The notes under the pieces are model-generated. The model ran no database searches and was not told where the DNA came from. It saw only the letters and a program-made list of their open reading frames with translations. A DNA stretch of 64,000 nt from Diadema antillarum. Taxonomy: Eukaryota. The DNA is taken from the NCBI RefSeq assembly GCF_040938485.1, contig NW_027272894.1:248001-312000 (forward strand), written 5' to 3'. Shown in pieces: positions 21,788 to 43,067 of this stretch. Made by a program: the position numbers and the translations under genes. Each line of letters starts with the position of its first letter. Position 1 is the stretch's first letter.

Positions 21788-21867
21788 TTATAAGGCCTTT
21801 CCGAGATCTATCTTCTTTTGTATTGCCCTCGCTGAATGGTAGATCATCGAATCAATGAGTCCCGCCA
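21788..21867 (-). CDS. ERGIC3: ERGIC3 exon 11 (last coding exon, 80 nt)
   Basis: tttgcAG| (V)AGLIDSMIYHSARAIQKKIDLGKAL*; TAA at 21790-21788; lysine-containing cytosolic tail as in ERGIC3/Erv46. Confidence 0.96.
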
Positions 21868-22859
21868 CTGCAAAGAGAGATGAAACAAATATATATTATA
21901 TAGGTAGAAGCTTTCATGTGCTTTCATATGTCATGATAACAACAAAGAATTAATAATGATAATACAAATTCAAAGAGAATGATTACGAAACGCAAAACGA
22001 ACATCCGAAACAATTCACGAAAATTGAATCAAAGAAGGAAATAATAAATAATTCAAGATTGGTATGATTATTCCACTTTTTACGTTAGTTGGCGTCACGT
22101 CATTTCATGACATATATTTTTGAACCATTTCATGAGATGATGATTTCATTTATTAATTTCATGGAGGACCGAAGTAAAGAAACAGAGCAGAAAAGTTTGA
22201 TCCAATCGAAATAGAGAATGATATAGATATCAAATGATGTTTTACGCGCTCTTGCGAAACAGTGACAACGCCCACATCCACATGATTATTACGCAAATTA
22301 AGCATGGTGATGATATCATATCATAAATGTCCAGCAGGTTTTCAAAACAAATCTTACTAGTACGCATTATTCTTTTGGTCAATGATATAGCACACAAGAT
22401 CCTTTCTGTAGAGGTACAATGTATAACATTGCACTGTCATTCAATACTATCGAAAATATCCACGCAAAGGCTTTATTTTTTTCAGTCAGAATTCATGTCA
22501 GATTGGGAAAGGAAGTGGAAATTTATTTGCAAGCGAATTGGATACTTGTGCAACCAATTTATCTCCTTTACATTTTCGTAACTTTTCCCCATTTCAGTCT
22601 AACTTCAATGCATCACATTTCTGTTTGCCCGATTTTTATTCTCTCTGTCCGTGTCATTTCGTCTTGAAATGCTAGATACGTCAGAAATAAGAGCGATGGA
22701 CGGACTGAACTTTGAATCGGGAGTGCGAGGAAAGACTACCTCATTAATTACCACCGCCAACTCATCTACGTACAAATCAGTGGTATTTTGAGCTGGCAGT
22801 CCAGAGGGTTTAGGGGTAAACACACACACACACAAACACAAATGCAACAAATAATTTAC

Positions 22860-22915
22860 CTGTAAAAACTCCTCCAATTATTGCGCATACGCCAGTCAGG
22901 AAATGCATGAAAGAT
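22860..22915 (-). CDS. ERGIC3: ERGIC3 exon 10 (56 nt)
   Basis: ctgcAG| (R)SFMHFLTGVCAIIGGVFT(V) |GTAAAT. Confidence 0.95.
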
Positions 22916-23610
22916 CTGCAGGGATACGAGGAAAGCTAGAATTAGAGGGCGTCCAGATCCATCACAGTGCATGTATAATCTCGTAATTATGATGTCAACT
23001 TTGAGGTGCTGTTTCAACGTAGTTCATAGAAAAATCGCAAGATTATGTAAAGAGATCACAAAGTGGTAAACTGTGCTTTGAGTATTTACGATGTATAGTG
23101 AATTCTGTACACGCATATAAATTACATACCACTATTAAGTAGGGCCCTATTTACATTTTGTGTCAAGATGTAAAACTTTGCTAAATAGCAACCAGTCATA
23201 CGCAGTGTACTACATGCGTCAATGTACAAAATCATCATTCCTTTCAGCTACTTCACTGAAATTGTTCAACGAAAACAAACACAACGATAAGTGAAGCGTG
23301 CTTTTTTTTTTTGCTTTTTTTTTCTGTTATGTTGACTTCTTACTCATTTGAATTCCAAAGACAAAATGGCATTATAATCAAAATTGGTAAGCCTTTGTTT
23401 TGCCCTCGCGAGAACGACATAAAGCCCGATCATTTGTAGTGTAGGCTATTTCATTGTTTGTACTTTGTTTTAATGTTCATGACATATTTATCTGTACATA
23501 ATGTAAGCAGGGCCCCTTGGTAGAACAGTTAACCAACTGAAAGGGCTACCTTGCTAAAAGAATATTGAAATAAATAAAGCAAACAAATAAATGCCATGCG
23601 TTGCACTCAC

Positions 23611-23818
23611 CTTTGTTTTTCTGTAAATCTGACCATCAAAGGTGATAGCTCGTAGAGCACGAAAATTCCTGGCAGCCCGTGTTCGCCGGCCGAGAAGGTT
23701 GTTGTTACTTGCTTCTCGTGTCTTGTCACTGAATATTGGTTGGTTCGTGTCACCGTCTTATCGAGCTTGGTATAAGTCGTCGGAACAATTTTAACGAAAT
23801 ATTGAAACATCGACGATC
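23611..23818 (-). CDS. ERGIC3: ERGIC3 exon 9 (208 nt)
   Basis: ttcAG| (G)SSMFQYFVKIVPTTYTKLDKTVTRTNQYSVTRHEKQVTTTFSAGEHGLPGIFVLYELSPLMVRFTEKQ(R) |GTGAGT. Confidence 0.96.
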
Positions 23819-24245
23819 CTGAAGGAATAAAAGAAAATAAGAGAAATAAAATAGATAACGTGACAAATAATTATGACAATGCAGGAGAGACTGCAGGCTA
23901 AAAGACTGTGGTGTGAATTTGAAGAATGAGCGGCCTTGTTTTCATGCTTGTATACGTAAACGCTGACATCACAACCAGATCAGATTATTGTTGGCGGAAC
24001 AAGACGTTAGTAATTATGCCTCTTTTTTTCATGGGTCCATCGATCGTTTTGTTGTTTGATGGGTGTGGTGTTATTTGTTTGTTTGTTCACTATTTCTTGA
24101 TGCAGGAAAACGTATTGAGGGCCGGCATGCGAAGCGGCATTATGATGTGATGTCCGATGCATGTATTCAGACATACTCTTCCCCCCCCCCCCCTCTCTCT
24201 CTCTCTCTCTCAAAAAAAAAAAAAAAAAGAAGAAGAAGAAAAGAA

Positions 24246-24524
24246 TGAAAACGTTCACTCACGAAGGGGTGAATTTCAGAAAAGAGTGCATTTTAGTAAA
24301 GTGAAATCGTAGTGAATCTGGAGTAAAAATACGTTGGTTTGTTGTTGTTTTTTTCTCATTTATTTTGGAGTGACCGCAGGGATCACTCAAAAACCTTTGA
24401 GTGATCCCTTTTGGTCTGCACTCCAAAATTGGTGAAAATAAAAATTTTTACTCAAAATTCATTCCAATTTCACTCTAAACTCACTCTATTCTGTTATCCA
24501 CTCCTTCAAAAGTGAAATTTTTCA
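24246..24524. mobile_element. Palindromic GAGTGA-rich foldback MITE, family D copy 1
   Basis: Inverted arms built of GAGTGA/TCACTC repeats around GGGATCACTC..GAGTGATCCC; cleaner copy at 54815-55069. Confidence 0.7.
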
Positions 24525-25015
24525 CTATTTTGGGTTTGTTTGTTTGTCTTTAGAGAGAGAGAGTAGGCCTGTGTATAATAACGTTTTCTTTGACGAAGTG
24601 ACTGATGTCCATAAGATGAATGGGGGGGGGGGATAATCTGATATAAAAATACATGAAGCTCCATCCCGGTTCACTTTGACGTAAGCGTCATCGAGATCTT
24701 TTTCTTCCGCAGCACTTGTCGGCAGGGAGGTGGGGGGAGTCTCTTTCTACCTCTCTGTAGTCAGCGAGCTGTAGATTGTAAAGTGAATCAAACTGCATTC
24801 AATTATACGCACGGACAAATAGAATGCACGGTTTCTTCGCTACAGTGAATTTGTGTGCGAGAAATCATGGTCAAAGCGCAGGACCAGCGTACTCCTCAAT
24901 ACTGAAGAGGGCCTATTATTACATTACTTATTTTCTGTAAGAGTGATTATTGACAGGTCAGAATATTGACGGCGGTACTGTAGTAGAACGAATTGGTGCC
25001 GATGCCAACAGACTG

Positions 25016-25418
25016 AAAGAGCTGGCGTAGTATTGGTTGAGGTGAAGATTCAGCCGTTAACTTTTTTGCAACTAAGAAAGCAGTCTATAAAATGCTACAG
25101 ATCATACGAGTTTAAGAGGAATTCCAAGTTCATTTGATGAAAATCGGTTTTAAAATGGTTGAGACATCTAAAAACAAAGTAAAACAAAGCAATTCTAATA
25201 AAAGGTGGGTCCCACCTTTTACTAGTAATTGGATTGCTTTGTTTTTTATATCTCAGCCATTCCAAAACCAATTTTCATCAATTAAACTTGGAATTCCCCT
25301 TAAAATTATATGCTCTTTCATATTTCATAAGAGATCTTTCATTATCTCACAAAATCATCATCAAAAAACGTTGGAAACCTGCAGCCCCATCTCAACCGAA
25401 ATTGTACCCATCCCTAAA
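25016..25418. mobile_element. TTAA-type (Kolobok-like) non-autonomous element, family C copy 1
   Basis: Aligns by eye with 27425-27852 and, inverted, with 35754-36141; internal ~190-bp foldback TTAAGAGGAATTCCAAGTT...AACTTGGAATTCCCCTTAA (25112-25303). Confidence 0.75.
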
Positions 25419-26499
25419 TCCACTGACACTCATTCGGAATTTCTAAATCGCATACTATTTGAATGAACTCGTTAACGGTGAAAAACAAAAGCTGAAAAGA
25501 AAGAAGGGAAGGATGAAGACTTTTTTGTTTTAAAGAATATTTTATTCTTCATCAATGGAAACATAACATACAAATAAATTGATACAGAAATCTCCGGACC
25601 AATTTTATAGTCCTTTTCATCAATGGATGCAAAACTGATATCAAAACTTAACATTGATTTAGCATGTTTTGATACACTCTGGTACATTTTTTTCACAATC
25701 AATATACACAATCCATATATAAACATCTCTTCTTTTCTAATTTTACATTATTAATTCCTCAATCTCTTAACAATTTTTTTCTTTCATTACATAATAAATT
25801 CTATTAACTGAATCACTTACCCCAAAAATAATTTCTTTTCAGCTTTCATACAATCCAACCTAAAATATCAATATCCATTGATTGAAGTTTTTTGTTAAAA
25901 AAACAAAACAAAACAACCCCCCTCGCCACCCCCCCCACTACTCAATACCCCCGTCCATTCTCCCTCTTACTACCCCACCCCGTCCCCCCTCCCCCTTCCA
26001 AAACCCCCATCACAACAAAACCTCAAAAGCAACTGAAACCTGTGTGTCCTGACTTACATTATAACACTTAATACGAGTGCGTGGAAAAGGCATTTCCTGG
26101 TGGATGTACGGCAGACCATACTCTGTTAAATAAACGCAAAGCAAATTCTCAATTCTTTTTCCAGTTTTCCCACTTTTGTAAATGTATTGACAACGTATTA
26201 CGTATAACTGCTAATTTTTCTTCTTCTAACCTATCCTGCTCTATAGACCTTTTAATGAAAAATTCCGTTGGGACGCAAGCGTTGATCGATAGACTGTATT
26301 TTAGCGTATAATCGATTAAAGTACTAATCGACCGCATTTACTTGCTTGGCCGCTATCCGTACACAATTACTGGCGAGTACCCGATCACATTTGGACCTCT
26401 AATAACTCCTAAAGACCTTTCAAGCTGTAAAATATCACCAGAGTTGGTGCTGAAGATATGAAGGTGTAAGATACTGAATAACGTCAACATAACGCAATT

Positions 26500-26588
26500 C
26501 CTCAGATTCGCTTTCTCAAGGGATCAGAAGAGACGAACACACCAGCCATTCACTCCCACCAGCGAATAGCAAGGTGTGGGACTAAAAG
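26500..26588 (+). other. ROMO1: Candidate non-coding first exon of ROMO1
   Basis: CG-rich block with ATCGAT motifs at about 26285-26320 and a donor AAAAG|GTAAAC at 26588/26589. A matching acceptor aacAG at 27981-27982 lies 42 nt before the ATG. Start coordinate approximate. Confidence 0.35.
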
Positions 26589-26930
26589 GTAAACCAGCAA
26601 GCACGTCACGCACGTAGGCAGCAGGGATAGCGCGTCTGCTGCGTAGCTATGTATTGTAGCTGGGTAGCGACTTGGATATGTACCGCAGCTAGCAAGCTTG
26701 CCTTTGTTGGCAGACCAATCTCTGAATCTTGGGCAAATTTTGCGGCGTAAATACCACAATATTCTGCAATAGATGTTAAAAGCTACTCCAAGAACAGCTT
26801 GCGTGTTCTTTTCAATTCCATTTTTAGATTTATTATTTATTTTTTAATTTAATATTAGATCTATTTTATATTTTTTAAAGCAAAATCCGGATTGATGAAC
26901 AGGCTCTTGACTTGAGTCCTGGGGCTTTGA

Positions 26931-27092
26931 TGGGGTGTTTCATCAATTTAGTCAGTGCTGACAATTTCAACAAAATCTTTGGTTTTGATTGGCTGAGATG
27001 CTCTTGTCACTGACTGTTATCATGGTGATTGTCAAAGTGATACAAAGACTGACAACTTGTCAGCGCTGACTAACTTAATAAAACACCCCCAG
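26931..27092. mobile_element. MITE family B copy 2
   Basis: GGGGTGTTTCATCAA ... TAAAACACCCCCAG; shares the TTTTGATTGGCT core with 10564-10725. Confidence 0.8.
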
Positions 27093-27424
27093 ACCTTTAC
27101 AGCATCGTTCCAGAAAAGTAAAATAAATGGAAGCATTCAACAACATGTTCAAGAAGTTGATTAAATCGACTGCCTGAGATGAGGTGTCTAAGGTCCTAGA
27201 CCTTTTTTTAATTTGTATAGTTTTACTATTATTAGCAGCCCAACCAGCAGTGAGCACGGCGTCTCGCAGAACACAGCGACAGGGCTGTGTATACACCTGT
27301 AGTAATATTTTCCATGACTGAGCAGCTAGTTTATTTGAAGCATAAATGGCCGGCTAGTATGTCAGAGCTCTATTTGCAACCTCAATAGTCAGATGATTAA
27401 AATGTGAAGTGCCATAAATGCTGT

Positions 27425-27852
27425 TTAAAAGGGATGGTACAGTATTGTTGGTGGAGATGAGAATTGGGCTGTTAACTTTTTGCGAGATACCAAGCAAGAA
27501 AACACTTATAAAATAGTGACAGAGCATACCATTCTAAGTATTACTAACTAGAGGAATGCAAAGTTTATTCGATGAAAATCAGTTTTGGAATGGCTGAAAC
27601 ATCCAAAAACAAAGTAAAACAAAGTGATTGTAATAAAAGGATGGGTCCTGCCTTTTATTAGAATCGCTCTGTTTTGGATATCTCAGCCATTTCAAAACCA
27701 ATTTTCTTCAAATAAATGTTAAATTCTTCATGGAATTACATACCCTTTCATATTTCATAAGAGCTAGGTTTCTTATTATCTCACACCAAAAAAAAAAAAA
27801 AAAAATGTTAGAAAACTGAAGTTAGGCCTCAACCAAAACTACAATCCCTTTA
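27425..27852. mobile_element. TTAA-type (Kolobok-like) element, family C copy 2
   Basis: TTAAAAGGGATGGTA ... TACAATCCCTTTA termini with the same internal foldback. Confidence 0.75.
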
Positions 27853-28024
27853 CAGCCATTGTGAGGTCAGTCAATCTTTGTCAAAGACAAATTGGTGGTC
27901 AGTGGTAATTGACAATCAGCAAAACAACAAACTTCTGATTTTTCTCCCCCCCCCCCCAAACAAAAAACAAAAAACAAAACAGGTTTCTGATTTGTTGGTG
28001 TCTGACACGTGACCATCCACAAAA

Positions 28025-28149
28025 ATGCCTGTTTCCATGCAACCCACCGGAGGCCCCAGCTGCTTCGACCGAGTCAAGATGGGATTCATGATTGGCTTCG
28101 CCGTGGGCATGGGATCTGGTGCCCTGTTTGGTGGCTTCTCAGCTCTTCG
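28025..28149 (+). CDS. ROMO1: Reactive oxygen species modulator 1 (ROMO1/Mgr2), coding exon 1
   Basis: [41 protein letters not shown](R) then CG|GTGAGC (phase 2); [11 protein letters not shown] is diagnostic. Confidence 0.97.
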
Positions 28150-28184
28150 GTGAGCATTATCCACAAAGCAATTATTAAGAGAAC

Positions 28185-28374
28185 TACAGTGGACTCCCGT
28201 TATAACGAAGTCTTCGGGACCAGCTGTTAAATTTCATTATATCGAAATTCCCTATAAAATCGATCAAATAAACAATAAATAACATAGAGCAAATAATGAT
28301 GCAGCATGAATTTTTACTTCATTGTAACCGGAATTTTGTTATAATCGTGTTCGTCATAACGGGAGTGCACTGTA
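28185..28374. mobile_element. Tc1/mariner-type MITE, family K copy 1 (ROMO1 intron)
   Basis: TACAGTGGACTCCCGTTAT ... ATAACGGGAGTGCACTGTA TIRs with TA ends. Confidence 0.85.
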
Positions 28375-29239
28375 GAACCATTACACAATTCGTTGTTTGC
28401 ACATTGGCAATATATCATACATACAAGTAAATACTGAGCTCCGCTCTTCATTAATTAATACTGTATAAATGGGACCATTCTCATTGCAAAAGTATTGTCA
28501 AACGGAGAGTAGCAATGTTTCAGCTTTCCACTCATATTGCAATGAAAAATCACATAGCTCGATAAAATACTACATGTGTACACATTACATAATTTGTGCA
28601 GTTGGGATGGAAGTCTGCAGCAAGCAATCTCAGCCACAAGTATGACATGGCAATAGACAGGATGCTAGCTGCACATTTTGTGTCTGGTCATGTGAAGGAA
28701 TCGAGACATCGAAGTGTAAATCAATCATTAGTGAATTTTGGGAATATAGATTTGATGTTTGTCTGGATTTGTGCAAGGTCGTATCTTAATATCAGTTGTA
28801 GAATTTCCCTTTTCCATATTTTTAAAAAATTCAGAATTATACAGATGTCAAGAGTAACAATTGGCATGTGTACATCTGAGAATGCTGAGTGCAGTAGCCT
28901 TTCTTCTTTACAAGCCTTCCAATCTGTGCAAAAATGATTCATAGGGAAATCCTGTTAGTAATGGCTTAAAAGCAATGACAATTTCCTTGTTATACAGGCA
29001 ACTCCATTATAACAAAGTTCCTCGGGACTAGCCAAACAATAATGTTGTATACAAAGATAATGCATGTATGACGATTTTTGGACCTGCATTTTTACTTTCT
29101 TCTGACAAGAGTTTTGATATGACCATGTTCATTATGATGGTAGTGCTCTGTATCAGGTTTCTTACCATATCAGGTACAAAAACAAATGTAAAATACATGT
29201 ATGGGACCTCCAACACCTTGTTGTATTAGGGTTTTATTA

Positions 29240-29401
29240 TACAGTGCACTCCCATTATAATGAACACGGTTATAACGAAATTCCGGTTACAACGAAGTAA
29301 AAATTCAGGCCGCAACATTATCCACTCTATGTATTTTTATTGTTTCTTTGTTCATTTATAACGAAAGAAAACTGCCGGTCCCGAGGACCTGTAGAACTGT
29401 A
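29240..29401. mobile_element. Family K MITE copy 2, inverted relative to copy 1
   Basis: TACAGTGCACTCCCATTATAATGAACACGGTTATAACGAAATTCCGGTTACAA matches the reverse complement of the copy 1 right arm. Confidence 0.8.
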
Positions 29402-29513
29402 TCTGACCTCATGAGAATGAGGTTTCTCTGTACTTTAAAAGAATGCTGGCTAAGAAAACAGTTACTTTGCATTGCTTTTCTCTCTTTTTATTTTTTTGTC
29501 CAAAAATATCCAG

Positions 29514-29622
29514 ATATGGATTGAGGGGAAGAGAGCTGATGAACACAGTTGGCAAGAGTATGGTGCAAGGAGGGGGAACCTTTGGACTTTTTATGTCGAT
29601 AGGAACCGGTATTCGGTGCTAA
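29514..29622 (+). CDS. ROMO1: ROMO1 coding exon 2
   Basis: Polypyrimidine tract and atccAG| (R)[35 protein letters not shown]; joined CDS 234 nt = 77 aa, with the conserved C-terminal GIRC. Confidence 0.97.
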
Positions 29623-30967
29623 GAGGTTGTAGTCTTCACCTTATGCAACATCAGTGTAATGTTGCACATGCTTCATCGACGCCGTGTCTTGGAGATGATG
29701 ACATGTTCTATCAGTGACCTTGCCTTGACGTCCTGAAGTTGGTTCTGAACGTGACGTGTCAACAACATTGTCCATGCTAATGTTAGAAATTGGGGTTACA
29801 TTCACATGATTCACGGAATCAGAAAGGATCCGGTACCCATCTCGCAAAGCCAGGCTGTGCCGACATAGAATGACTGATGTACACTCGCAAAATCTGCAGC
29901 CCAGTGATTTAGTGCCCTCTGCAGCACTGTTTAAGTGAACAATTATGTTGCAGATTCTGAAAGAATCAATGTTTCCTAAATCAGTTCTGTTATGAAAGCT
30001 GACTTCTTCTCTCTCTCTTTTTTTCAACACTTTATAATTTCACATCATTTGTTGGGAGGATGTAAACTTGACAGAAAAATAATGTGTAGAAGATGTATTT
30101 TGGGAACTTTCCAAGGGAAAATTTAAAAAGGAGATGAATAGTCTTTCTTGAAGGAATCGACATTTCAAGTTCTACTGCACTTGTGTGACATGAGTGTCCT
30201 CCCAGGATAAGAAGTCTAATTGACAAGATATCTATTATACATTGAAGTTGAAATGTCTAACTGCAATCAGATGTGTGTTTGTTTGTTTTTGTCAATGATT
30301 GCATTTATTTGTGTCTTCAAAAAGAACATTTTTACATATATTTCATGTAAAGAATACTTCGACATACTTATTCTTACTTTGAAAATGGTTTAACACATTG
30401 TCCTTCAAATGATACACTGAATTTGTTGTGGCTCTAGAAATCATATCATTTCCAGTATTGGACTGTATAGCACTGCTGAGAGATGTTATATATACAGCAT
30501 GTATGAGCTGAATTTCTTTCCTGAACAAAAAGTTGTTGAAAGGAGTATTGTCTGCAAATTATCATTATCAGAGCCACCTAGCCATCACTGGTTGAGCATT
30601 ATGAAACAGGAGATGTAACAAATAATAAGAAATAGCATGGAAGGAATGGGGGAAAAAATAATAATGTAAGGCTATTTTCCATGTAAGAAAGAAAATACAT
30701 GTATCTGTACACTGCATAATGTAATGAAATAAAGAAGTGTGATGTAGGCATGTACAATGTTTATTGGAAACATTTTCTGCAAGGATGAGCAGTTAAAGGA
30801 CAAATTAAGAAAAAAAAACCCCACCTGTTCATGTTAATCAAAATATGGTCTAAAGTGACTAATTTTCACAAACATTTAATTTGAGCATACATGCTGGAGA
30901 CAAGAAAACAAAAACTAGAACAGATTGCTTCCGAAACATCAACAAACCAGTTAGCTGTTTGTGTCTG

Positions 30968-31007
<40 letters not shown>

Positions 31008-33243
31008 AGCCTATAAACAACTGTTAACCCTTCTATCTCAACTTGCAAAGATTTAGATATTAATGAGCTTTGAAGGCCCGTGTTACATGTACTAATAAAA
31101 GCCTTAGCGTATTTGTATGGAAAAGATGGTGAAAATACACCATATGACATCAAAGATGGAATTATTTCAGTCTCTGTACAAATGTACTTAAAAGTGCTTG
31201 AAGGACATTAACTAAATTTGAACTGCTTTTGTGAATTCTGGGTAATGCTAATGACTAATTCCTGACTTTGGTTATTTTTTTGTTTGCAGAAAGTCTGAAG
31301 TCGATCTGTTTCTTCAGCCTTTAACAGTTGTATCTACTGCTCCTCTTTTAACATTTCTCTTCCTTTTTCTTCATATTTTTTTTTTGTGATATACAGTCTA
31401 GCAAGCTTGTATGCTGAGTACTCTGTCTACTGAATGACTGGAGATATACAGGGGAAAAAAAGACTATTCTTCATGCAAGTCCTTTCTTTAACTTTGGATG
31501 AGAATATTTTGTAAAGCATGCAAACTTCTCTTGTCATGAAGAATAAAGGGAACAAATTAAAATACAAAGAAATTGCAACCTTTTCTCAGTATGTATTGCT
31601 CTTCTTGTATGGGTATCGTCAAACTCATCACAGTGACAGAGTCTAGTTCAAATTGTGCACTCTAGCAGGTGGCAAAATAACAAACCATAAGCCTCCTTGA
31701 ATATCAAAACAAAAATCAATACAACCAGTCTCCCATACCTTGACATCAGATTGGCAGAATTATCCAAAAGTCCCAAAATTTCCTCGTGTATTTCTTCTTC
31801 AAGACGTGTGAGTCCTAGTAATTTACTTGGGAGGGTTACCTTGACATGGAATCCCTGGTCCCAATAAATTGAACATACCGTTTCCACCCCAGGCATTACC
31901 CGGTACTCAAAGCAAAATTCCAACATATGTAACTTGGCTATTCCCAGGCAAACAAATATGTACCAAGATTAACCTGTTGAGGACAAGTCCCGAGTATACT
32001 CGGGCAGATGTTTATGGGAAATGCGTGTTGTAGCAAAATCAGCCCATCTTCAACGGGTTGAGCAGGTGTGGGTGGCAAATCCTGGCACTGCGTGACAAAT
32101 CTTTTCACACTCAATCGCAAGTACGGCAAGGTCAGAATGAACATGCATCTATACGTGATTTGGTGTATGTAAGAAAAATACCCCTACCCCTACACACGTT
32201 TACAGTAAGCCAACACACAGCACTTTTTGCTCATGAAGCACTTTTTGCAGCATGATTAAATGTGTGAGCAAATGTAAACGTGACCAAGGGGCTCCTTGAT
32301 CCGACACACCACACACACATGCAGACACAGTTCAGCATGCATATCCTGCAACTCTTGCATTTCGATTTCTTCTTGTTTGTTAAGGTATTTAAATCTTTCA
32401 CCAGAAAATTTCCATTCCATTCAATTTATTCACATTCTAATTTATTTACAACTAAGACAAACATGCAAACAATCAGCATTAATCAACCATTTTGAACATC
32501 AATCAAAAGTTCCAACATTGGATAAGTCACAGATCCCGATGTTTGTCTTTTGAAAGTTGAACCATTTTCTTCGGTCCCGTCTGGCTCAAGGTAAGCAAGG
32601 TTGACTCTATTATGTGACATTGTTATACACTGTATTAGTTCATGGTCGCTAAATGGATGATATGGCAGAAGTAAGTTCCAATGATACAGGATTACACCAT
32701 GCTCATAGCAGCATCTCTGACATTGTCATTTCCAAGTGGTTTGTCAAGTAATTAAGAGGTCAAACTCTGAAGCAAATGGAAATGTTAGTAAACTAGCTTG
32801 GCAGGATGCAGCAATATGCATTGGCACAGCACACACAACTTCACCATCACGTCAACTTGCGTCAACTTGCACCATGTGAAAAATGGATTGCGCAATGACT
32901 CTGCCTTCAATACTGCGATTACAGCACATTCTAGCCATGACAATGACTCACAGACTCACACTACCAAAACAAAGTCATCATGCTTGAAACTTTGTTTTGG
33001 CAACGAGACACACACACACACCAAAAAAAAAAAAAAAAAAATGTACACTTCTAAAGTCAGTTGTTGGTATTTTGTGGCTCACTGTAATATAAGAGCTCTC
33101 ACCCTCTGCTTTTGTGAACAAGGTCTGTGAGTACAGGTATTGCATACAGGCGACACATGTTAATAACACAGTCCAGGACAGCCCTTTTTAATCTTAATAT
33201 CAAAATGTTGGTACATTCATAGCTGAACAGTAAACTATATTAA

Positions 33244-34014
33244 CCCTAATCAGGCTGGGCTTTTTTGGCTATGCTATATCTGGGGGGGGGATTCCGCCCC
33301 CCCTTCAGATCTCGCCTATGGAACGCGTGATCGCGCCGAAAATCGGCACACGCGACGCCCGCGACGTATAATATCAAAATGTATGGTTGCTTTCTCCGAA
33401 AAATTTTTCTTATATTTTATATATATTAATTATTGTAATTTATGCATAAAATCAGTTTTGGGCTCTAAATCACTTATTAATGCTCTAATTAAGCTAATTT
33501 CTTTTTAAAAATGTTTCTTGTACAGTTGTGTATCATTCTCCTGAGACATAGGATAAAAAAAAATCTGTATCGAAATTAATTTCTTATGTATTTGATTGTT
33601 TTTTGAATTTCTTACGTATTTCTTTGTTTTTCGACCTTTTGTTTTTGTTTGTTTTTTGGCCAAAATTTGTCACAGACATTTTTCGAAGCTTTATTATGCT
33701 AAAATAAATTAATTTCATCCATTCTAAGTCAAGATATGAATTTTTATGTGAATTAATTGAAAAAACACAATTTGCAGTGGATTTGTACACAAAATCACGT
33801 TTTGGAGCAATTTTGGGGTTGACGAATTTTTTTCGAACGGGCGTCGCGTCAAAACGGTACGCGCGGGCGCAACAATTTTGGTCTCAAAAGTTGCGCGATA
33901 CTTCAAAGAAAAAAGTCATGAAACATCGCGGCGGGAGCTTATCGCGCTGCGAAGATATTGCGCGAAACGTCGAGGGGGGGTGGATTCCGCCCCCGCCCCC
34001 CAGCCTGATTAGGG
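33244..34014. mobile_element. piggyBac-type non-autonomous element, copy 1 (771 bp)
   Basis: TTAA|CCCTAATCAGGCTGGG ... CCCAGCCTGATTAGGG|TTAA: TTAA target duplication and CCC/GGG termini. Confidence 0.9.
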
Positions 34015-34230
34015 TTAAGATATGTACAACGTAGGTGATAATTGGGTACCTGAATTTCTACTTCATTGCAACAACAATTTTTTTTTTTTTAATAACTGAG
34101 CTTGTTATAACGGAAGTGTACTGTACCATTAATCTTTTTTTTTTTTTGAAGGAAGAACCCATCATGTTAAGAGGGGTGGGGGAGGGGGGTGAACATGCAC
34201 CCATCGGGAAGGAAGGGGACGGATACTTAC

Positions 34231-34327
34231 CCTTGGTGTCTATAACTTTTGTCCTGTCCAATGGGTTCTCCATCCCTGGATACTCCATGCCAAATGACAG
34301 CGTTTTGATGTGATGGGTCATGTTGAA
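34231..34327 (-). CDS. ERGIC3: ERGIC3 exon 8 (97 nt)
   Basis: cattAG| FNMTHHIKTLSFGMEYPGMENPLDRTKVIDTK(G) |GTAAGT. Confidence 0.95.
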
Positions 34328-34855
34328 CTAATGGCAAAGAGATGATGATAGAGAAGAGTAACATGTGTGCACAGTCAAGTATGATTTACAGACCACCAGT
34401 GAACTAAGGAACACATGTACAGAGCTGCAATCTGCCAGACTATCTCCTGTATCCCAGCACCTGACGTGGTACAGACATGTGTACTGGTTAACCACGTAGA
34501 GGAATTATCCAAAACAGAGAATAGCAAATACGTAACACTTTAATACCCATCCTCTGTATTGTCTTACAAATGGATCTAACTGTAGTCATTTCACAGACAT
34601 AACTGGTTTCCCTGCACAAGGCAATGCTCTTGATATTCAATGCAGCTACACATGTAATGCTTTTGCATGCTGGCATAAACTCACTCATTTGCATGGAACT
34701 GGACTTTGATATCCGGACAGAGCATAGCAAACTGATACTTTCTCCATTCTCTGTATTGTCTCATACGCAAATCTAACTCTACTCATCGCACGAGCAAACA
34801 AAGCTGTATTGCATCGGGTAGACTGCATTAGTAAAGAACAGGGTGGATGACATGC

Positions 34856-35071
34856 AGGTTGCAATCTTCCAGTCCTGCATGTGACTGCAGCCATCCTGAC
34901 CAAACCCTGCATCATATCGTGGAAGACTGCAACCTGCAGAAGTTCCCAGGAGGGCTTGAAGAACTTGCCCAAGCGAGTGATACTGCCCTGAACTGGATCT
35001 GCAGCTTAGATATCGACCTATAAGGCTATAACCCCCCACCCACCTTGTTGTACAACAGACGATGATGATGA
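34856..35071 (+). mobile_element. 5'-truncated LINE 3' end (Ingi/Vingi-like, I group)
   Basis: Open frame RLQSSPACDCSHPDQTLHHIVEDCNLQKFPGGLEELAQASDTALNWICSLDIDL* (CCHC knuckle C-x-C-x7-H-x4-C; TAA at 35021-35023), followed by a (GAT)n tail at 35061-35071. Clade assignment from memory of the motif. Confidence 0.7.
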
Positions 35072-35753
35072 GCTAACTGAGGGAAAGCATTTTACAAGAG
35101 CTAAACCAGCCTTTAGTGCATAGGTCTACTCTTCTGTCTTCTTCCCCTGCCAATCTCTTGATTGATCGCTTCAGTTTCTTTCTTCTACCTACTCTCACAA
35201 TGCTTGCACAATACATTGTACTTTCTTCTTCTTCTTTTAAAAAACAAACAAACAAACAAACAAACAAACAAAAACAATCTTTCAGATTTGACACAGGACA
35301 TCAGCACCTCCAATACTGGAGAGCCAATGGAGTAAAATGGGCCTGAGCTTTCGATCACAAAATATCATCTCCTCCTCAATTACCAATTGTATTATTTTTC
35401 ATACTTCCATTTACCCACTAACCCAAAACTTACTAATTCCCCCTAGAGTGAAAAATTACATGCATTATTCCTGTGTTAGAAGGGTAAATCTAACGAAATT
35501 CTCATCTGCTTACCAACACATATACCATATTTTCCCTTCTCTGAACTGCAGATTTTGCATCTCACGTACTGATCTATTTGCCATTTTCACTGATGGAGAT
35601 ACATGCATATTGTGAAACACAAGGGAAGTTTAATCTGTTTTACCCATGTAGCAAACAATCTGATATTTGTTGCAACACACGTCCTGTACAGTGCCCCCAG
35701 CCTGTGGTTATCAGGAACTAGTCATAAAGTGTATAACAAGCTGTTTCATCACT

Positions 35754-36141
35754 TTAAAGGGATTGTATAGTTTTGGTTGAGATCTAATTTCAGGTTTCTA
35801 GGACATTTTTGGGTGAAATAATGAGAAACTTCTTATGATTATGAAATATGTAAGAGCATGTAATTCCATGAGGAATTCGACATTTATTTGATGAAAATTG
35901 GTTTTGAAATGGCTGAGATATCCAAAACAGAGCGATTCTAGTAAAGTGTGGGACCCACACTTTGTTACAATCGCTTTGTTTTACTTTGTGTTTGGATGTT
36001 TCAGTCATTCCAAACCCGATTTTTATCAGATAAACTTCGAATTCTGATCTGTACTATGAATAAGTATTTTCTTGGTATCTTGCAAAAACTTTTTCTCAAA
36101 AACCAATTCTCATCTCCACCAATACTTTTTCATCACTTTAA
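35754..36141. mobile_element. TTAA-type (Kolobok-like) element, family C copy 3 (inverted)
   Basis: TTAAAGGGATTGTA ... CATCACTTTAA; reverse complement of copies 1 and 2. Confidence 0.75.
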
Positions 36142-36154
36142 CATGGCATTACAT

Positions 36155-36319
36155 CAGGACCCCATTTCATAAAAGATGTTAGGATGACAACTCTTGCTGG
36201 AATGACAACTTCCCACAGCAAACAGCCAATCAGGAAGCTGTATTCTTGTCGTTACCATGACAATTGTCATTCCAGCAAAGAGTTGTCATCAAATCAACTT
36301 TTTATGAAATGGGGCCCTG
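36155..36319. mobile_element. MITE related to family B
   Basis: CAGGACCCCATTTCATAAAA ... TTTTATGAAATGGGGCCCTG TIRs; ends about 40 bp from the exon 7 donor. Confidence 0.8.
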
Positions 36320-36360
36320 ATATGTTTGAATGACTCAAGACTTGAACCTCTGAGACTCAC

Positions 36361-36450
36361 CTTTCCACCTGCATAAGGCTGTAAATCGTGAACATGCACA
36401 TGATGCTGCTGGAAACTTTTACCAGGCGCAAAGTGGAAATTGCCAGCAAC
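36361..36450 (-). CDS. ERGIC3: ERGIC3 exon 7 (90 nt)
   Basis: atgcAG| VAGNFHFAPGKSFQQHHVHVHDLQPYAGGK |GTGAGT. Confidence 0.96.
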
Positions 36451-36852
36451 CTGCATGAGAAAATACCGTAAACACAGATAAAGCATGAGACACAGCATTG
36501 AGAAATTTTCTCCGCTACGTGAGGGAGAGATCACAGTGCATAAATCATCCCTTGCCGGAAAAATAAGAAAAACGAAAGGATATAGGAAAAGCTGGCATAA
36601 TTTACCTACCAAAATGGATAACAGCTAGCAGTCTACATAATATGTAAACATGTGTATCCCTTCAATGATATGTACAAATGTGACTGGAGGTCATTGACCA
36701 TGGCCTTTGACCTCACACAATAACCTAAAAACCTTGGCAAAAGTGAATCATTTCCAAGTTTATCTCCGTCTTATTTTGTAATTTACATTCCCATCAGATT
36801 TTAAAGTTTCAAAAAGTTATGGTTTGAAAATGAGATTTTTAACAATAGTTGA

Positions 36853-38233
36853 CCTTTGACCTATGGCATTTTGTGTTGTTTTGTTTTAGTTTTGTTTTGT
36901 TTTTCCACACAATTTCACTGAAATAAGAGTTCATTTAATAGTACTGCTTCTTACTGCATGAGATTGCCAAGGATTATTCACACTTTAAAGTATAACGGAT
37001 AGATAATATTAGAACTTTTAGCCAAGAGTTCATTGACCTTTGAACTTTTGACCAATATCTCATCAACACAATTTTCTCTCATTATCATCTCACACAGTAC
37101 ACCTTGGCTGAGTATTAAATTAGAATACTAGAATAACAACAAGAACATGGTACCAATTACAAATTCCCCATAAAATCATGTTAACAAGACCTGGAGTATA
37201 TAAATGGCAGATTGATGGATAAATGGACACGAGTGGACAACAGAAATATGCACAGTCTTCCTCTAGCACCCGTCATGAACGGAAGGATGAAAATAAATAA
37301 ATATTTATACATTTACAACAAAGAAGTGTATTTAACAAAACAACATCGTATGAAAGAAAAATATACTATCTTGAAGCATAATAGGTTCAGCATAGTTCCA
37401 TCAGTCCTGAATGTGTTATAAAGCATAGAAAGTATACTAATCATGGACTGTGCAGAAAATGGTTACCATGGCAACAGAACAGTTACATCTTGACAGTATC
37501 ATAAATTTCAATGTTGAGATGTCAGCCATCAGATTTGAGAATAAAGCAACAAATTGTGATGAACAAGATATCCCTCCCCCTTCAGTAAGATTGAGCAACA
37601 GAGTGTCATAACTGTGAGGCGAGAAGTCTGTACTGAGGATATTTCCCATACATTTGACTTGCATTGAGTGAGCGATATTACCTATAAAAACTAATAAATC
37701 TATGACAAATAAAGCTAAAATCATGACAACATCATAGTTCTTGATCAAGATCCAGCCCAATGTCATGTGCATTGAACAAAAACATGCCAGATTGCCCAGC
37801 TCCTTTCTGGAGATGGGCTCTGTGGACTTGCCATGGGTGCATTGATATGCTAATTAGCTTATGAATATGCAACATGCATATGCATGAGGAAACCTGCATT
37901 ATATAGCGTTGTGTAATCCCACTATTTTCTTAATTGCATTGTGTAGATTTGTGAAGATTAATGCCATTTATAATCTAAAAATAATTGTTTAGTCATTTTA
38001 AAGTTAGGTTTTACCCTTCCAATCAATTAAGAATACCAAAGATGACTAAAACAAAATGATTACTGCTGTACTTTTTGTAACCGCGGGTAAAATTTCAGTG
38101 ATAAATATAAGATTTCATATTTTCAAACCCAGGATTATTGAGTAATATCTTTAGATTTCTTTTGAGTTTCTTAAGCAGGGTGTATTTCTGAAGTCAGAGA
38201 CAACACCCACATTAGAATGGCAAAGACAGAAAT
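36853..38233. repeat. ~1.4-kb diverged direct repeat, copy 1
   Basis: Colinear with 38951-40308 throughout (shared CCCACTTTAAAGTATAACGGATA-like, GGACACGAGTGGACAAC, CATGCCAGATTGCCCAGCTCCTTTCT, AGCAGGGTGTAT..CTGAAGTCAGAGA). Confidence 0.9.
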
Positions 38234-38697
38234 TGTTACAAAATGGATTTAAGAATGTAGCCAATTGGAAGCGCTGAAATGAGTCACGTGTGCGTGTATT
38301 AATTTCTTAGTAAATGCACGGCCGGGGCCTGACGTACGTCACAATGTTTACACTAGCAGTGCGCACTCAATCAGTTGTTACAAGTGCATCACGCGCTACT
38401 ATACGCGCTGTCAATCCTGTAAACAACTTCTAGTTCGGGCTGCCACAACAGCCGGCGGCCTTTCTTGTGCATAACACGTGGCGTACGTATACTCTTATAC
38501 GTACGTACAGTACTTATGTGCGGGATTTCCGAGTGCGACGTGCGTAAATGTTTGGGACGAACATCTTCGGACATCTTGACTTTTGAGCGAGTGCTACATG
38601 TAGCTGACTGGTATTGACCCACAAAGGTACGTGAATAATGCTGTTAGTTTTCGACCCATTTTATAAAACAAATGATGCACAGGATTATTTCGTGGCG

Positions 38698-38814
38698 TTA
38701 GTGAAGGTGCGGCTCACTCTCGAGTATTGACAACGGTTGCAAACATGCACTCGGCTGCGCCTCGTGCATGTCGCACCATTGTCAATACTCTCGAGCGCGC
38801 CGCACCTTCACTAA
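38698..38814. mobile_element. 117-bp hairpin mini-MITE
   Basis: About 50-bp near-perfect arms TTAGTGAAGGTGCGGC...CATGCAC / GTGCATG...GCCGCACCTTCACTAA with TA inside both ends. Confidence 0.7.
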
Positions 38815-38950
38815 CACACTCTATCCTGCGCATCATTTGTATAATAGCAGAGCAAAGCAAGAGACCTCCATGGCATGAAATGATCATGAAATGTTATTGG
38901 CATTCACTGCATGGGGCGCAGACAAGTGCATTTTAAAGCTAGACCAGTGG

Positions 38951-40308
38951 CCTTTGACCTAAGTTTGTGTTTCCTGTTGTTTAGTTTTGCTTATTTTTTG
39001 TTTTATTTCTGAGAAATGAGTGTTCATTCATTAGTAATGCTTCTTGCTGCACGAGGTTGCCATGGATTATTCCCACTTTAAAGTATAACGGATACGAGAA
39101 CTTTTAGCCAAAAGTTCATTGAACTTTTGACCAAAATCTCATCACCACAATCTCATTATCATTTCACGTATTACACCTTGGTTGAGTATCAAATGAGAAT
39201 AACAAGAACAAAATACCAATTACAAAATTCCCCCCTAAAATCATGTTAACAAGGCCTGTAGTAAATACATGTAAATGGTGGATGGATGGATAAGTGGACA
39301 CGAGTGGACAACCAAAATATGCAGTCTTCCTCTAGCACCTGTCATGGACGGAAGGATGAAAATAAATAAATATGCATTCACAACAAAGAGGTGTAATTAT
39401 TATAACGGCATCGTATGAAAGAAATATAACACTTTCTTCCAGCATAATAGGTGTAGCATAGTTCCATCAGTCCTGCAAGCATTATAAATCATTCAGAGAG
39501 TAAACTAGTCATGCCTTGTAGAATATGGTTACTATGGCAACAGAACAGTTACACATTGACAATATCATGAATTTCAACATAAATATAAGTTTGCCCTCAG
39601 ATTTAAAAACAGAGCAACACATTTTGATGAATCAGATATCAATCCCCCTTCGGTAAGAATAAGCACTAGAGTGTCATAACTGCAAGACGAGTAGTCTGTA
39701 CTGTGCATATTTCCCATATATTTGTCTCTCGTTGAGTTAGCAATTTTATTTATTAAAAAAAAAGAAATGCTAAATTTATGACAAAGAATGCAAGAATCAT
39801 TATAACATCACAGTTCTTGATCGAGATCCAGCCCAATGTGGTGTGCACCGAACAAAACCATGCCAGATTGCCCAGCTCCTTTCTAGATGGGCTCCGTGGC
39901 CTTTCCATGAATGTGAGCTTTGATATGCTAATTAGCTCATGAATATGCACACATGTACTAGTATATGCATGAGGAAACCTAAAGTCCCATGATTTTACTA
40001 TTTTCTTAATTGCATTGTGTATATTTGTGAAGATTAATGCCACTTATAATCTAAAAATAATTTTTTAGCCATTCTTATGTTAGGTTAGACCCTTCCAATC
40101 AATAAAGAATGCCAAAAATGACTAAAACAAAATGATTACTGCAGTATATTTTGTACCCGCGAATAGAATTTTACTGATAAATATAATATGTCACATTTCA
40201 TAACACAAAGTTATTGAGTAATATCTTTAGATTTCTTTTGAGTTTCTCAAGCAGGGTGTATCTCTGAAGTCAGAGAAAACATCCATATTGTAATGGCAAA
40301 AACAGAAT
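38951..40308. repeat. ~1.4-kb diverged direct repeat, copy 2
   Basis: See copy 1; offset about 2.1 kb. Confidence 0.9.
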
Positions 40309-40840
40309 TTGACAACAAGGCAAAGCAAGACTTTCTTGCACCATGAAATTACAGCTAACACACAATATATGTGAATTGTCAATGGTGCTCAATGCACCAT
40401 AGCGCAGACAAGACCTGTCGTATGTATTTTGATGCTATACCAGTGGCAAGCAGTGGTGGTTCTTATCTTTATACCATACAGTGGGTACTGCATAATTATT
40501 CAATTGGTACAATTCTGTTAAGTTCTGGTTATTTTTTTTCACCTTTTTTTTTTTTTTTTTGCAACTGACAAATTGCCCTAAACATGAAAAAAGCAATGAA
40601 TTGATCAGTGTTTTAGTTGTAGCCATGACAAACTAAAACATTGATTAATTCAGTGTTTTTGTTTTGTTTTGTTTGGTTTTGGTTTTGTTTTTGTTGTTTT
40701 TTTAGTTGATATAGGCAATTTGTCAATCAGTTGCAATAAAATCAACAACTCAAGGGTAGAATTTCATCAATTTGAATAATTATGCAGTATCTGCTGCATG
40801 CTATAAAGATTAGAACCAGCACTGACTGTCCGACAAAAGC

Positions 40841-40930
40841 TCAGTGATCTAATTGATAAGACGCCTGTCCGGTGATTAGGAGGTCCTAGGTTTGAATCCT
40901 GCTGGAGTATGTATGCCCGTGATTTCTTTT
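40841..40930 (+). mobile_element. tRNA-derived SINE head inside a composite inverted repeat (about 40450-41015)
   Basis: TGATCTAATTGATAAG degenerate A box and GGTTTGAATCCT B box; flanks show inverted arms (GCAACTGACAAATTGCCCTA / TAGGGCAATGTGTCAATCAGTTGC). Confidence 0.55.
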
Positions 40931-41892: not shown

Positions 41893-41947
41893 CTGGAATG
41901 TGAGAGGTGTATTGTAGTCATGGGCTGATACTGCCGATGGTATTTGT

Positions 41948-43019: not shown

Positions 43020-43067
43020 ATAGCAGATAACCACCTATCTCTCATTACGCAAGTGATAAATAATATA

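What the first reader, a model, noticed from the sequence alone, without database searches (positions are those of the whole stretch)
26500..29622. ROMO1 is nested antisense inside ERGIC3 intron 8, and the two genes are also neighbours in human
Directly seen: a complete two-coding-exon ROMO1 on the plus strand between ERGIC3 exons 8 (34231) and 9 (23818) on the minus strand. From recalled knowledge, human ERGIC3 and ROMO1 both lie in 20q11.22 within a few hundred kb but are not nested, and TRIB3 is on the same chromosome (20p13). Inference: an ancient deuterostome ERGIC3-ROMO1(-Tribbles) linkage. Either nesting is ancestral and was resolved in vertebrates, or ROMO1 moved locally into the intron. 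It couples an ER-Golgi cargo receptor and a mitochondrial TIM23-associated/ROS gene by convergent overlapping transcription. I do not know whether this has been described.
Basis: partly seen in the sequence, partly recalled or inferred. Interest (0 to 1): 0.7.

Follow-up and report, generated by a model that had tools for sequence, protein, structure and literature searches.

The report
ROMO1 nested in ERGIC3: ancient pair
In this sea urchin the small mitochondrial gene ROMO1 sits backwards inside one intron of the ER-Golgi gene ERGIC3, and ants, a wasp, a butterfly and other invertebrates keep it in or next to that same intron, so this gene-within-a-gene layout probably dates to the common ancestor of insects and sea urchins.

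Summary
ROMO1 (+ strand; coding exons 28025-28149 and 29514-29622; 77 aa) lies wholly inside the 10,412-bp phase-1 intron between ERGIC3 coding exons 8 and 9 (minus strand). My model is 100% identical to the RefSeq ROMO1-like protein of Diadema antillarum. The allelic contig C384 has the same layout, so it is not a misjoin.

A metagenome scan gave 80 ROMO1 loci. Seventeen of them, from about 11 distinct sources, carry ERGIC3 exons. In all 17, ROMO1 is antisense between the exon 8 and exon 9 equivalents, in the same phase-1 intron. One source is a myrmicine ant. Consecutive accessions or locus tags place ROMO1 beside the ERGIC3 exon 9-11 model in Danaus chrysippus, Cotesia typhae and Formica fusca.

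The nest therefore most likely predates the protostome-deuterostome split. It is absent from a dipteran-like contig and two unidentified taxa. In human and turkey the genes are un-nested but still close; Chinook salmon has both within 200 kb.

Not supported: the Tribbles link and any functional coupling. Not available: RNA reads, and neighbourhood look-ups in named genomes. I found no paper describing the pair. It is a new member of a rare known kind, like synapsin-TIMP.

The parts
28025..28149 (+). ROMO1 coding exon 1 (ATG to phase-2 donor; 41 codons plus 2 nt)
   Evidence: ORF and sequence. Pfam Romo1 positions 1-31, E 2.1e-10. Donor CG|GTGAGC sits at the same codon position as in 13 other ROMO1 loci.
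28150..29513 (+). ROMO1 intron (1,364 bp, phase 2, inside the Arg codon after ...SAL)
   Evidence: GT at 28150 and AG at 29512-13. Position and phase are shared with ant, insect-type and other metagenome loci. ROMO1 is therefore not a retrocopy.
29514..29622 (+). ROMO1 coding exon 2, including the stop TAA at 29620-29622
   Evidence: Pfam Romo1 positions 32-66, E 5.7e-14. The joined model equals D. antillarum RefSeq ROMO1-like at 77/77 residues. Identity to the allelic contig is 99.1% here, against about 92% in the surrounding intron.
26500..26747 (+). Putative ROMO1 promoter or non-coding first exon (unverified)
   Evidence: CpG-rich stretch, possible donor GCGGC|GTAAAT near 26747, and a polypyrimidine tract plus CAG acceptor near 27983 just upstream of the ATG. 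No RNA data were available.
23819..34230 (-). ERGIC3 coding intron 8, the host intron (10,412 bp, phase 1, splits a Gly codon three codons before MFQYF)
   Evidence: Donor AAG G|GTAAGT at 34231/34230 and acceptor TTCAG|GA at 23819/23818. Phase and position are the same in L025, L042, L048, L049, L050, L071, L080 and L096.
34231..34327 (-). ERGIC3 coding exon 8
   Evidence: Pfam COPIIcoated_ERV positions 98-126. Aligns to residues 243-275 of Ceratina calcarata ERGIC3.
23611..23818 (-). ERGIC3 coding exon 9
   Evidence: Pfam COPIIcoated_ERV positions 135-202, E 1.8e-20. All named hits to this exon's profile are 'ERGIC protein 3'. Aligns to Ceratina ERGIC3 residues 275-342.
21788..49809 (-). Whole ERGIC3 coding span. 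Approximate exons: E1 49714-49809, E2 47539-47628, E3 46079-46183, E4 45551-45676, E5 within 44845-44934, E6 41730-41894 (3' edge not set: it abuts the N-masked stretch 41463-41727), E7 36352-36453, E8 34231-34327, E9 23611-23818, E10 22861-22920, E11 21791-21886, then the stop.
   Evidence: Pfam ERGIC_N and COPIIcoated_ERV hits exon by exon. Motif and peptide mapping. Colinear tblastn of the 386-aa bee ERGIC3 P0287. Only the E8 and E9 boundaries were read base by base.
124..7905 (-). Tribbles-like pseudokinase gene, two exons seen (124-486 and 7576-7905). It is a neighbour, not part of the nest.
   Evidence: Pfam Pkinase, E 2.9e-11, for 124-486. The '[11 protein letters not shown]' motif is typical of Tribbles (my own knowledge). 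It is absent from the flanks of the other nested loci.

Best explanation
This is a true gene-within-a-gene. ROMO1 is the small TIM23-associated inner-membrane protein of mitochondria (yeast Mgr2). It is a separate, intact, single-copy transcription unit with its own conserved intron. It lies antisense inside coding intron 8 of ERGIC3 (yeast Erv46), an ER-Golgi cycling membrane protein. The arrangement was inherited from at least the last common ancestor of protostomes and deuterostomes: the same orientation, the same host intron and the same intron phase occur in a sea urchin and in insects. The most likely reason for its persistence is structural entrapment. ROMO1 can leave only through two breakpoints inside one intron of a host gene that is presumably under strong constraint. 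In compact genomes the intron is almost filled by ROMO1: host introns are 567-1,981 bp, the ROMO1 stop lies 16-133 nt from host exon 8, and the ATG lies about 270-380 nt from exon 9 (about 1.5 kb in the ant). Both genes are presumably broadly expressed and may share open chromatin, but neither needs the other. The nest was resolved several times: in tetrapods the genes are still within about 0.15-0.5 Mb, and it is missing from a dipteran-like lineage and at least one unidentified lineage. Shown here: the anatomy, the homology of the host intron, and the taxonomic spread. Inferred: the ancestral state and the entrapment mechanism. Untested: expression and any interference between the two transcripts.
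For: Anatomy and splice sites. Pfam on every exon. The model equals the RefSeq D. antillarum protein. ROMO1 occurs only at this locus and its allelic copy in the 1.75-Gb assembly. The allelic contig is colinear, with the coding sequence better conserved than the intron. Seventeen of 80 metagenome ROMO1 loci carry ERGIC3 exons. All 17 have ROMO1 antisense between the E08 and E09 equivalents, with no exception. Host-intron donor and acceptor share position and phase 1. The intron inside ROMO1 also shares position and phase 2. L042, L039 and L040 have ROMO1 exons 67/67 identical to myrmicine ant ROMO1. Consecutive accessions or locus tags: Danaus chrysippus CAG9566982 (ERGIC3), CAG9566984 (ROMO1), CAG9566985 (ERGIC3 C-terminal 109 aa); Cotesia typhae G9C98_000285 and G9C98_000286; Formica fusca KAM0733937 and KAM0733938. 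Vertebrate linkage comes from PMC8513692, PMC8470100 and PMC12794147.
Against: Only echinoderm and insect sources are identified with confidence. The other nested contigs (L025, L048, L049, L050, L070, L078, L096) are unidentified invertebrates. Persistence in the large introns of the urchin (10.4 kb) and the insect-type contigs (7.8 kb) is not fully explained by lack of room, so some selection cannot be excluded. There are no expression data at all. Accession adjacency is a proxy for gene order, not a coordinate.
Confidence: 0.8

Rival explanations
1. The nest is kept by selection because the two genes are functionally coupled. Head-on transcription, or overlap of the ROMO1 3' end with ERGIC3 exon 8, would tune ERGIC3 splicing or levels against ROMO1. 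Alternatively, the ROMO1 promoter inside the intron is bidirectional and also drives a short ERGIC3 C-terminal isoform.
For: The nest has been kept for over half a billion years, even in 8-10 kb introns where breakpoints are possible. In compact genomes the ROMO1 stop codon is 16-133 nt from host exon 8, so the mature transcripts must overlap antisense; in L029 an AATAAA signal lies about 25 nt before the host exon. Many annotations carry a 109-113 aa ERGIC3 product that starts exactly at the Met after the host intron. In Danaus this product sits beside a full-length 385-aa product. Soldà et al. found nested antiparallel pairs enriched among conserved overlaps (PMC2330155).
Against: The nest was lost in tetrapods, in a dipteran-like contig and in L030/L032, and both genes remain intact there. 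No expression, splicing or antisense data exist here. The short ERGIC3 models are just as easily gene-prediction artefacts caused by the nested gene. No functional link between TIM23 gating and ER-Golgi cargo cycling is known to me.
Confidence: 0.15
2. Convergence: ROMO1 inserted independently into the same ERGIC3 intron in echinoderms and arthropods.
For: None directly. In principle a long intron of a broadly expressed gene is a permissive landing site.
Against: The host intron, its phase, the orientation and the polarity (ROMO1 3' end towards exon 8) are the same in all 17 loci. ROMO1 keeps its own ancestral phase-2 intron, so it did not arrive as a retrocopy. Host introns of 567-769 bp leave no room for repeated independent insertion. 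In vertebrates the genes remain close although they are not nested.
Confidence: 0.03
3. Assembly artefact: a misjoin placed ROMO1 between ERGIC3 exons.
For: The assembly keeps both haplotypes apart (1.75 Gb; nearly every single-copy family hits two contigs) and contains N-masked stretches.
Against: The second haplotype contig C384 has the same order and orientation, colinear over more than 40 kb. There is no N run between 23.6 and 34.3 kb. The same nest occurs in unrelated assemblies.
Confidence: 0.01

Closest known systems
Synapsin-TIMP nested pair (TIMP antisense inside a synapsin intron, conserved from Drosophila to human)
   Same: A small gene lies entirely within one intron of an unrelated host gene on the opposite strand, and the arrangement is conserved between Ecdysozoa and Deuterostomia. 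Soldà et al. 2008 (PMC2330155) found only three such overlaps in a five-genome survey, all nested antiparallel.
   Different: Syn-TIMP is still nested in vertebrates and was duplicated with them. ERGIC3-ROMO1 is un-nested in human and turkey, though still nearby, so a survey centred on human, mouse, fly and worm would probably miss it. Here both partners look like broadly needed cell-biology genes rather than a neuronal host with a secreted inhibitor.
Conserved ancient microsyntenic pairs (Irimia et al. 2012, PMC3514665)
   Same: Two unrelated genes are kept adjacent across phyla.
   Different: Those blocks are explained mainly by regulatory elements of developmental genes lying in bystander genes. 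Here neither gene is a developmental regulator, and the simplest cause is physical entrapment in an intron. I could not check whether this pair is in their tables, because the supplements are not held.
TLR array nested in a CFAP337 intron of the same sea-urchin genome (earlier scan note s1-215078)
   Same: It is in the same genome, and the genes are nested antisense within one intron of a conserved host.
   Different: According to that note, the TLR nest is a lineage-specific, expanding array. ERGIC3-ROMO1 is a single-copy pair kept in a homologous intron across phyla.

Membership tests
ROMO1/Mgr2 (Pfam PF10247) | Match to the Romo1 profile above the curated cut-off, over the full profile length | tested here: met
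   Exon 1 covers profile positions 1-31 (41.3 bits) and exon 2 covers 32-66 (52.7 bits). The cut-off is 27.6 bits.
ROMO1/Mgr2 (Pfam PF10247) | Animal-type protein of about 77-81 aa ending in ...GIRC, orthologous to annotated ROMO1 | tested here: met
   The 77-aa model is 77/77 identical to RefSeq ROMO1-like of D. antillarum, 76/77 to D. setosum and 74/77 to S. purpuratus. It aligns end to end with named ROMO1 proteins.
ROMO1/Mgr2 (Pfam PF10247) | Mitochondrial inner-membrane location and association with TIM23 | not testable with these tools
   Inferred from what is known of the family.
ERGIC3/Erv46 (ERGIC_N plus COPIIcoated_ERV) | N-terminal ERGIC_N domain followed by a COPIIcoated_ERV domain | tested here: met
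   ERGIC_N on E1 and E3. COPIIcoated_ERV on E6, E7, E8 and E9, in order.
ERGIC3/Erv46 (ERGIC_N plus COPIIcoated_ERV) | Orthology to ERGIC3 rather than ERGIC1 or ERGIC2 | tested here: met
   Every named hit to the exon 9 profile is 'ERGIC protein 3'. The 386-aa Ceratina ERGIC3 aligns colinearly over residues 21-384. The other COPIIcoated_ERV/ERGIC_N matches, presumably paralogues, lie on other contig pairs. No explicit tree was built.
Anciently conserved nested antiparallel gene pair (Syn-TIMP type) | The inner gene lies entirely within one intron of the host, on the opposite strand | tested here: met
   ROMO1 CDS 28025-29622 (+) lies inside ERGIC3 intron 23819-34230 (-).
Anciently conserved nested antiparallel gene pair (Syn-TIMP type) | The same pair, orientation and orthologous host intron occur in distant phyla | tested here: met
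   Echinoderm (the window), a myrmicine ant (L042) and other invertebrate contigs share the phase-1 intron before MFQY. Adjacency is seen in Danaus, Cotesia and Formica.
Anciently conserved nested antiparallel gene pair (Syn-TIMP type) | Both genes are expressed from the nested configuration | not tested
   No sequencing run was listed and read laying was not used. Indirect evidence only: intact ORFs, a single-copy gene, and coding sequence conserved between haplotypes.

The most novel reading that the evidence does not exclude
The nest is not just trapped but used. The ROMO1 promoter inside ERGIC3 intron 8 would be bidirectional and drive a short ERGIC3 isoform of exons 9-11 (109-113 aa), which many annotations list. 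In addition or instead, the forced antisense overlap of the ROMO1 3' end with ERGIC3 exon 8 would couple the output of a mitochondrial import component to that of an ER-Golgi cargo receptor. On this reading the arrangement would also reach beyond Bilateria and still persist in teleosts.
Probability: 0.12. Interest if true: 0.75.

Novelty: new member of a known kind. Interest (0 to 1): 0.55.

Why it matters
Gene order is mostly scrambled between phyla, and overlaps between genes are rarely conserved. A five-genome survey found only three overlaps shared by Ecdysozoa and Deuterostomia, all nested antiparallel (PMC2330155). ERGIC3-ROMO1 adds a clean case. It is a single-copy pair with the same intron, phase and orientation in a sea urchin and in insects. 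Natural 'experiments' exist in which the nest was undone: tetrapods, a dipteran-like lineage and others. This makes it a good system for asking whether old nested pairs survive because they cannot be separated or because the overlap does something. It also has a practical use. Many public annotations seem to split ERGIC3 at exactly this intron, giving 109-113 aa 'ERGIC3' models. Knowing about the nested gene would explain and correct that error.

Tried and rejected
- **The look-up of encoding contigs:** The planned survey of neighbourhoods in named genomes (Holothuria, Mytilus, Anopheles and others) could not be run.
- **The look-up of sequencing runs:** listed no run. Read laying was therefore not used, and there is no RNA or long-read evidence.
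- **ROMO1 scans of genome contigs and viral contigs:** found nothing.
- **Human 20q11.22 neighbours:** Aminotran_5 (NFS1-type), RBM39linker, Copine, eIF-6, UQCC1 and AAR2 families were sought in the urchin genome. None is on C2006 or the 2.88-Mb C384, so the idea of a larger conserved block was dropped.
- **Tribbles:** sought next to ERGIC3 in the other loci, with no hit.
- **UTR mapping:** the transcript-like echinoderm contig L017 aligns only over the coding sequence, so the UTR exons remain unmapped.
- **Protein atlas on exon 9:** gave only the family, not the paralogue.
- **PDB search:** gave only yeast Erv41.
- **Paper supplements:** those of Irimia 2012 and Simakov 2022 are not held.
- **Literature:** searches for ROMO1+ERGIC3, microsynteny+ERGIC3, ROMO1+nested+intron and CG7011 found no description of the nest.
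- **Taxonomy of L025, L048, L049, L050 and L070:** best ROMO1 or ERGIC3 matches gave only weak hints of arthropod- or chelicerate-like sources.
- **Big representative search:** not used, because the word search and family scans settled both proteins.
- **Joined ROMO1 model:** translated and compared only inside my own scripts.
- **N-masked stretches:** left untouched.
Full report
**1. What is in the window**

The plus strand carries a two-exon ROMO1 coding sequence.
- Exon 1 runs from the ATG at 28025 to 28149 and is followed by GTGAGC.
- Exon 2 runs 29514-29622. It is preceded by a pyrimidine tract and CAG, and ends with TAA.
- The two exons match the first and second halves of Pfam Romo1.
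- The intron is phase 2, inside the Arg codon after '...SAL'.
- Joined in my own script only, the exons give 77 aa. This is identical at 77/77 to the RefSeq protein 'reactive oxygen species modulator 1-like [Diadema antillarum]'.
- That protein's longest contig is 2,880,795 bp, exactly the length of contig C384 of this assembly. The genome is therefore D. antillarum, as earlier scan notes said, and ROMO1 itself is already annotated.

The minus strand carries ERGIC3.
- I found eleven coding exons between 49809 (ATG) and 21788 (stop). The evidence is exon-wise Pfam hits (ERGIC_N, COPIIcoated_ERV), peptide mapping and a colinear alignment of the 386-aa ERGIC3 of the bee Ceratina calcarata.
- All named hits to the exon 9 profile are 'ERGIC protein 3'.
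- The intron between them is 10,412 bp and phase 1. It splits a Gly codon three codons before the conserved MFQYF.
- ROMO1 lies inside it, antisense, 4.2 kb from exon 9 and 4.6 kb from exon 8.
I had no RNA evidence to test this.

**2. It is not an artefact**

- The window is G000:C2006:248001-312000. ROMO1 occurs in the whole 1.75-Gb assembly only here and on C384.
- C384 carries the same ERGIC3 exons around ROMO1 in inverted orientation. It is colinear with the window over more than 40 kb at 77-99% identity.
- Most of the other single-copy families I searched also hit two contigs. UQCC1 hit one contig twice and AAR2 hit once. On balance the two contigs are haplotypes.
- The ROMO1 exons differ by one base each between haplotypes (99.1-99.2%). 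The surrounding intron is about 92% identical.

**3. The same nest elsewhere**

I therefore scanned metagenome contigs with an alignment of ROMO1 proteins and obtained 80 loci. I then searched them in the sandbox with the urchin ERGIC3 exon peptides.

- Seventeen loci carry ERGIC3 exons: L025, L029, L039, L040, L042, L048, L049, L050, L070, L071, L072, L074, L078, L080, L090, L092 and L096. They come from about 11 distinct sources.
- In every one, the ERGIC3 exons are on the strand opposite to ROMO1. The exon 8 equivalent lies downstream of ROMO1 and the exon 9 equivalent lies upstream.
- Where both splice sites are on the contig, the host intron is phase 1 and splits a codon 2-4 codons before MFQY(F/Y), just as in the urchin.
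- Host introns range from 567 bp (L050), 616 bp (L025), 769 bp (L049) and 1,981 bp (L042) to about 7.8-8.0 kb (L071, L080).
- The intron inside ROMO1 is also at the same codon and phase in all intron-bearing loci. The nested gene is therefore not a retrocopy.

**4. Who these contigs are**

- L039, L040 and L042 have ROMO1 exons 67/67 identical to ROMO1 of myrmicine ants (Temnothorax, Vollenhovia, Atta, Mycetomoellerius).
- L071-L092 are insect-like. I recall their JGI sample ids as termite-gut metagenomes, but I did not verify this.
- The rest (L025, L048, L049, L050, L070, L078, L096) are unidentified invertebrates. L050 also carries an innexin-like ORF, a family I know only from invertebrates.

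Named species give independent support through consecutive accessions or locus tags.
- Danaus chrysippus: ERGIC3 385 aa is CAG9566982, ROMO1 is CAG9566984, and a 109-aa ERGIC3 product is CAG9566985. That short product is the exact C-terminus of the long one, starting at MFQYY.
- Cotesia typhae: ERGIC3 fragment G9C98_000285 and ROMO1 G9C98_000286.
- Formica fusca: ROMO1 KAM0733937 and ERGIC3 fragment KAM0733938.
- In Ceratina calcarata and Sitodiplosis mosellana both proteins are listed with the same longest-contig length (2.62 Mb and 7.09 Mb), which suggests one scaffold.

A sea urchin (deuterostome) and insects (ecdysozoan protostomes) share the arrangement in a homologous intron. The nest therefore most likely existed in their common ancestor. 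Independent insertion into the same intron, in the same orientation and with the intron inside ROMO1 kept, is very unlikely.

**5. Where it is absent**

- L053 has a ROMO1 54/57 identical to that of a stalk-eyed fly. It has 5.3 and 7.4 kb of gene-dense flank with no ERGIC3 exon.
- L030 and L032 have an intronless ROMO1 directly downstream of an adrenodoxin-like ferredoxin ORF, with no ERGIC3 exon in 10 kb.
- The annelid-type contigs with large introns are uninformative.
- In human, both genes lie in chr20:33.86-34.34 Mb (hg19), together with CPNE1, RBM12, NFS1, RBM39 and others (PMC8513692).
- In turkey the listed order is RBM39, ROMO1, NFS1, CPNE1, RBM12, ERGIC3 (PMC8470100).
- In Chinook salmon a ±100-kb window holds only ergic3, romo1, mych and mtss1 (PMC12794147).
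- Together with split 110-aa ERGIC3 models in Perca and Coregonus, this raises the possibility that teleosts are still nested. That is a lead, not a result.

**6. What is not supported**

- No Tribbles exon lies near ERGIC3 in the other loci. TRIB3 at 20p13 shows only same-chromosome location.
- NFS1-type, RBM39, copine, eIF6, UQCC1 and AAR2 genes are not on the 2.88-Mb urchin contig. What is conserved is the pair, not a block.
- Functional coupling is untested.

**7. Mechanism**

- I favour structural entrapment (confidence about 0.8 for the whole reading, less for this step). In compact genomes ROMO1 nearly fills the intron.
- The ROMO1 stop lies 16-133 nt from host exon 8. The ATG lies about 270-380 nt from the exon 9 acceptor, and about 1.5 kb in the ant.
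- Almost any breakpoint that frees ROMO1 would therefore damage ERGIC3 or ROMO1.
- The same geometry forces an antisense overlap between the ROMO1 3' end and ERGIC3 exon 8 in those species. A regulatory use therefore cannot be excluded (rival, about 0.15).

**8. Comparison and novelty**

- The closest known case is the synapsin-TIMP nest.
- Soldà et al. 2008 found only three overlaps conserved between Ecdysozoa and Deuterostomia, all nested antiparallel (PMC2330155).
- Their design (human, mouse, zebrafish, fly, worm) would probably miss this pair, because it is un-nested in mammals and apparently in at least some Diptera.
- I found no paper describing ERGIC3-ROMO1 nesting.
- I rate it a new member of a known, rare kind.

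**9. Limits**

- Several nested contigs are taxonomically unidentified.
- Accession order is only a proxy for coordinates.
- The N-masked stretches (14687-14912, 41463-41727, 55663-55882) were left as they are. The second abuts ERGIC3 exon 6, so that exon's 3' boundary is not set.

Noticed in passing
P0183, P0195, P0202, P0208, P0222, P0230, P0237, P0242, P0292, P0349: Public annotations of many animals list a 109-113 aa 'ERGIC3' product that starts exactly at the Met of MFQY(F/Y), the first residues after the host intron. The animals include Lingula, Patella, Biomphalaria, Bulinus, Capitella, Perca, Danaus, Parnassius, Cotesia, Formica and other Hymenoptera. Where it could be checked (Danaus, Cotesia, Formica), the product sits next to ROMO1. 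It is either a systematic gene-model split caused by the nested gene or a real short isoform from an intronic promoter.
   Followed up: partly
window 25134-25466 (+), 27572-27722 (+), 35790-36008 (-): An interspersed repeat, whose read-through frames share a peptide like '...ETSKNKVKQS.CNK...ALFWISQPFQNQFSS...', occurs at least three times in ERGIC3 introns 7 and 8. One copy lies 300 bp upstream of the ROMO1 ATG.
   Followed up: no
window 124-486 and 7576-7905 (-): A Tribbles-like pseudokinase gene lies about 14 kb downstream of the ERGIC3 stop on the same strand and runs off the left end of the window.
   Followed up: partly
window 14687-14912, 41463-41727, 55663-55882: Three N-masked stretches of 220-265 bp. 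The middle one directly follows the ERGIC3 exon 6 coding sequence (...YLEVN).
   Followed up: no
G000:C144:457290-458413 and C144:2191265-2199594 (allelic C219 and C1295): eIF6 and a copine gene, whose human counterparts EIF6 and CPNE1 flank ERGIC3 in 20q11.22, lie 1.7 Mb apart on one urchin contig that is not the ERGIC3-ROMO1 contig. This is a hint of macrosynteny that chromosome-scale data could test.
   Followed up: no
G000:C61:487243-487362 and C61:2527897-2528016: The UQCC1 family exon hits twice, with identical score, on the same contig and strand, 2 Mb apart. Most of the other single-copy families instead hit two different contigs. This may be a large intra-contig duplication or a haplotype joined in tandem.
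   Followed up: no
L030:3680-4586 and L032:395-1540: In two unidentified marine-type contigs, an intronless ROMO1 follows an adrenodoxin-like 2Fe-2S ferredoxin ORF on the same strand (167 bp after it in L030), with no ERGIC3 nearby. This looks like a different, possibly operon-like neighbourhood of two mitochondrial genes.
   Followed up: partly
L029:345-460: In this compact unidentified taxon, the ROMO1 stop is followed by an AATAAA signal about 25 nt before the antisense donor site of ERGIC3 exon 8. The ROMO1 3' end must therefore abut or overlap the host exon.
   Followed up: partly
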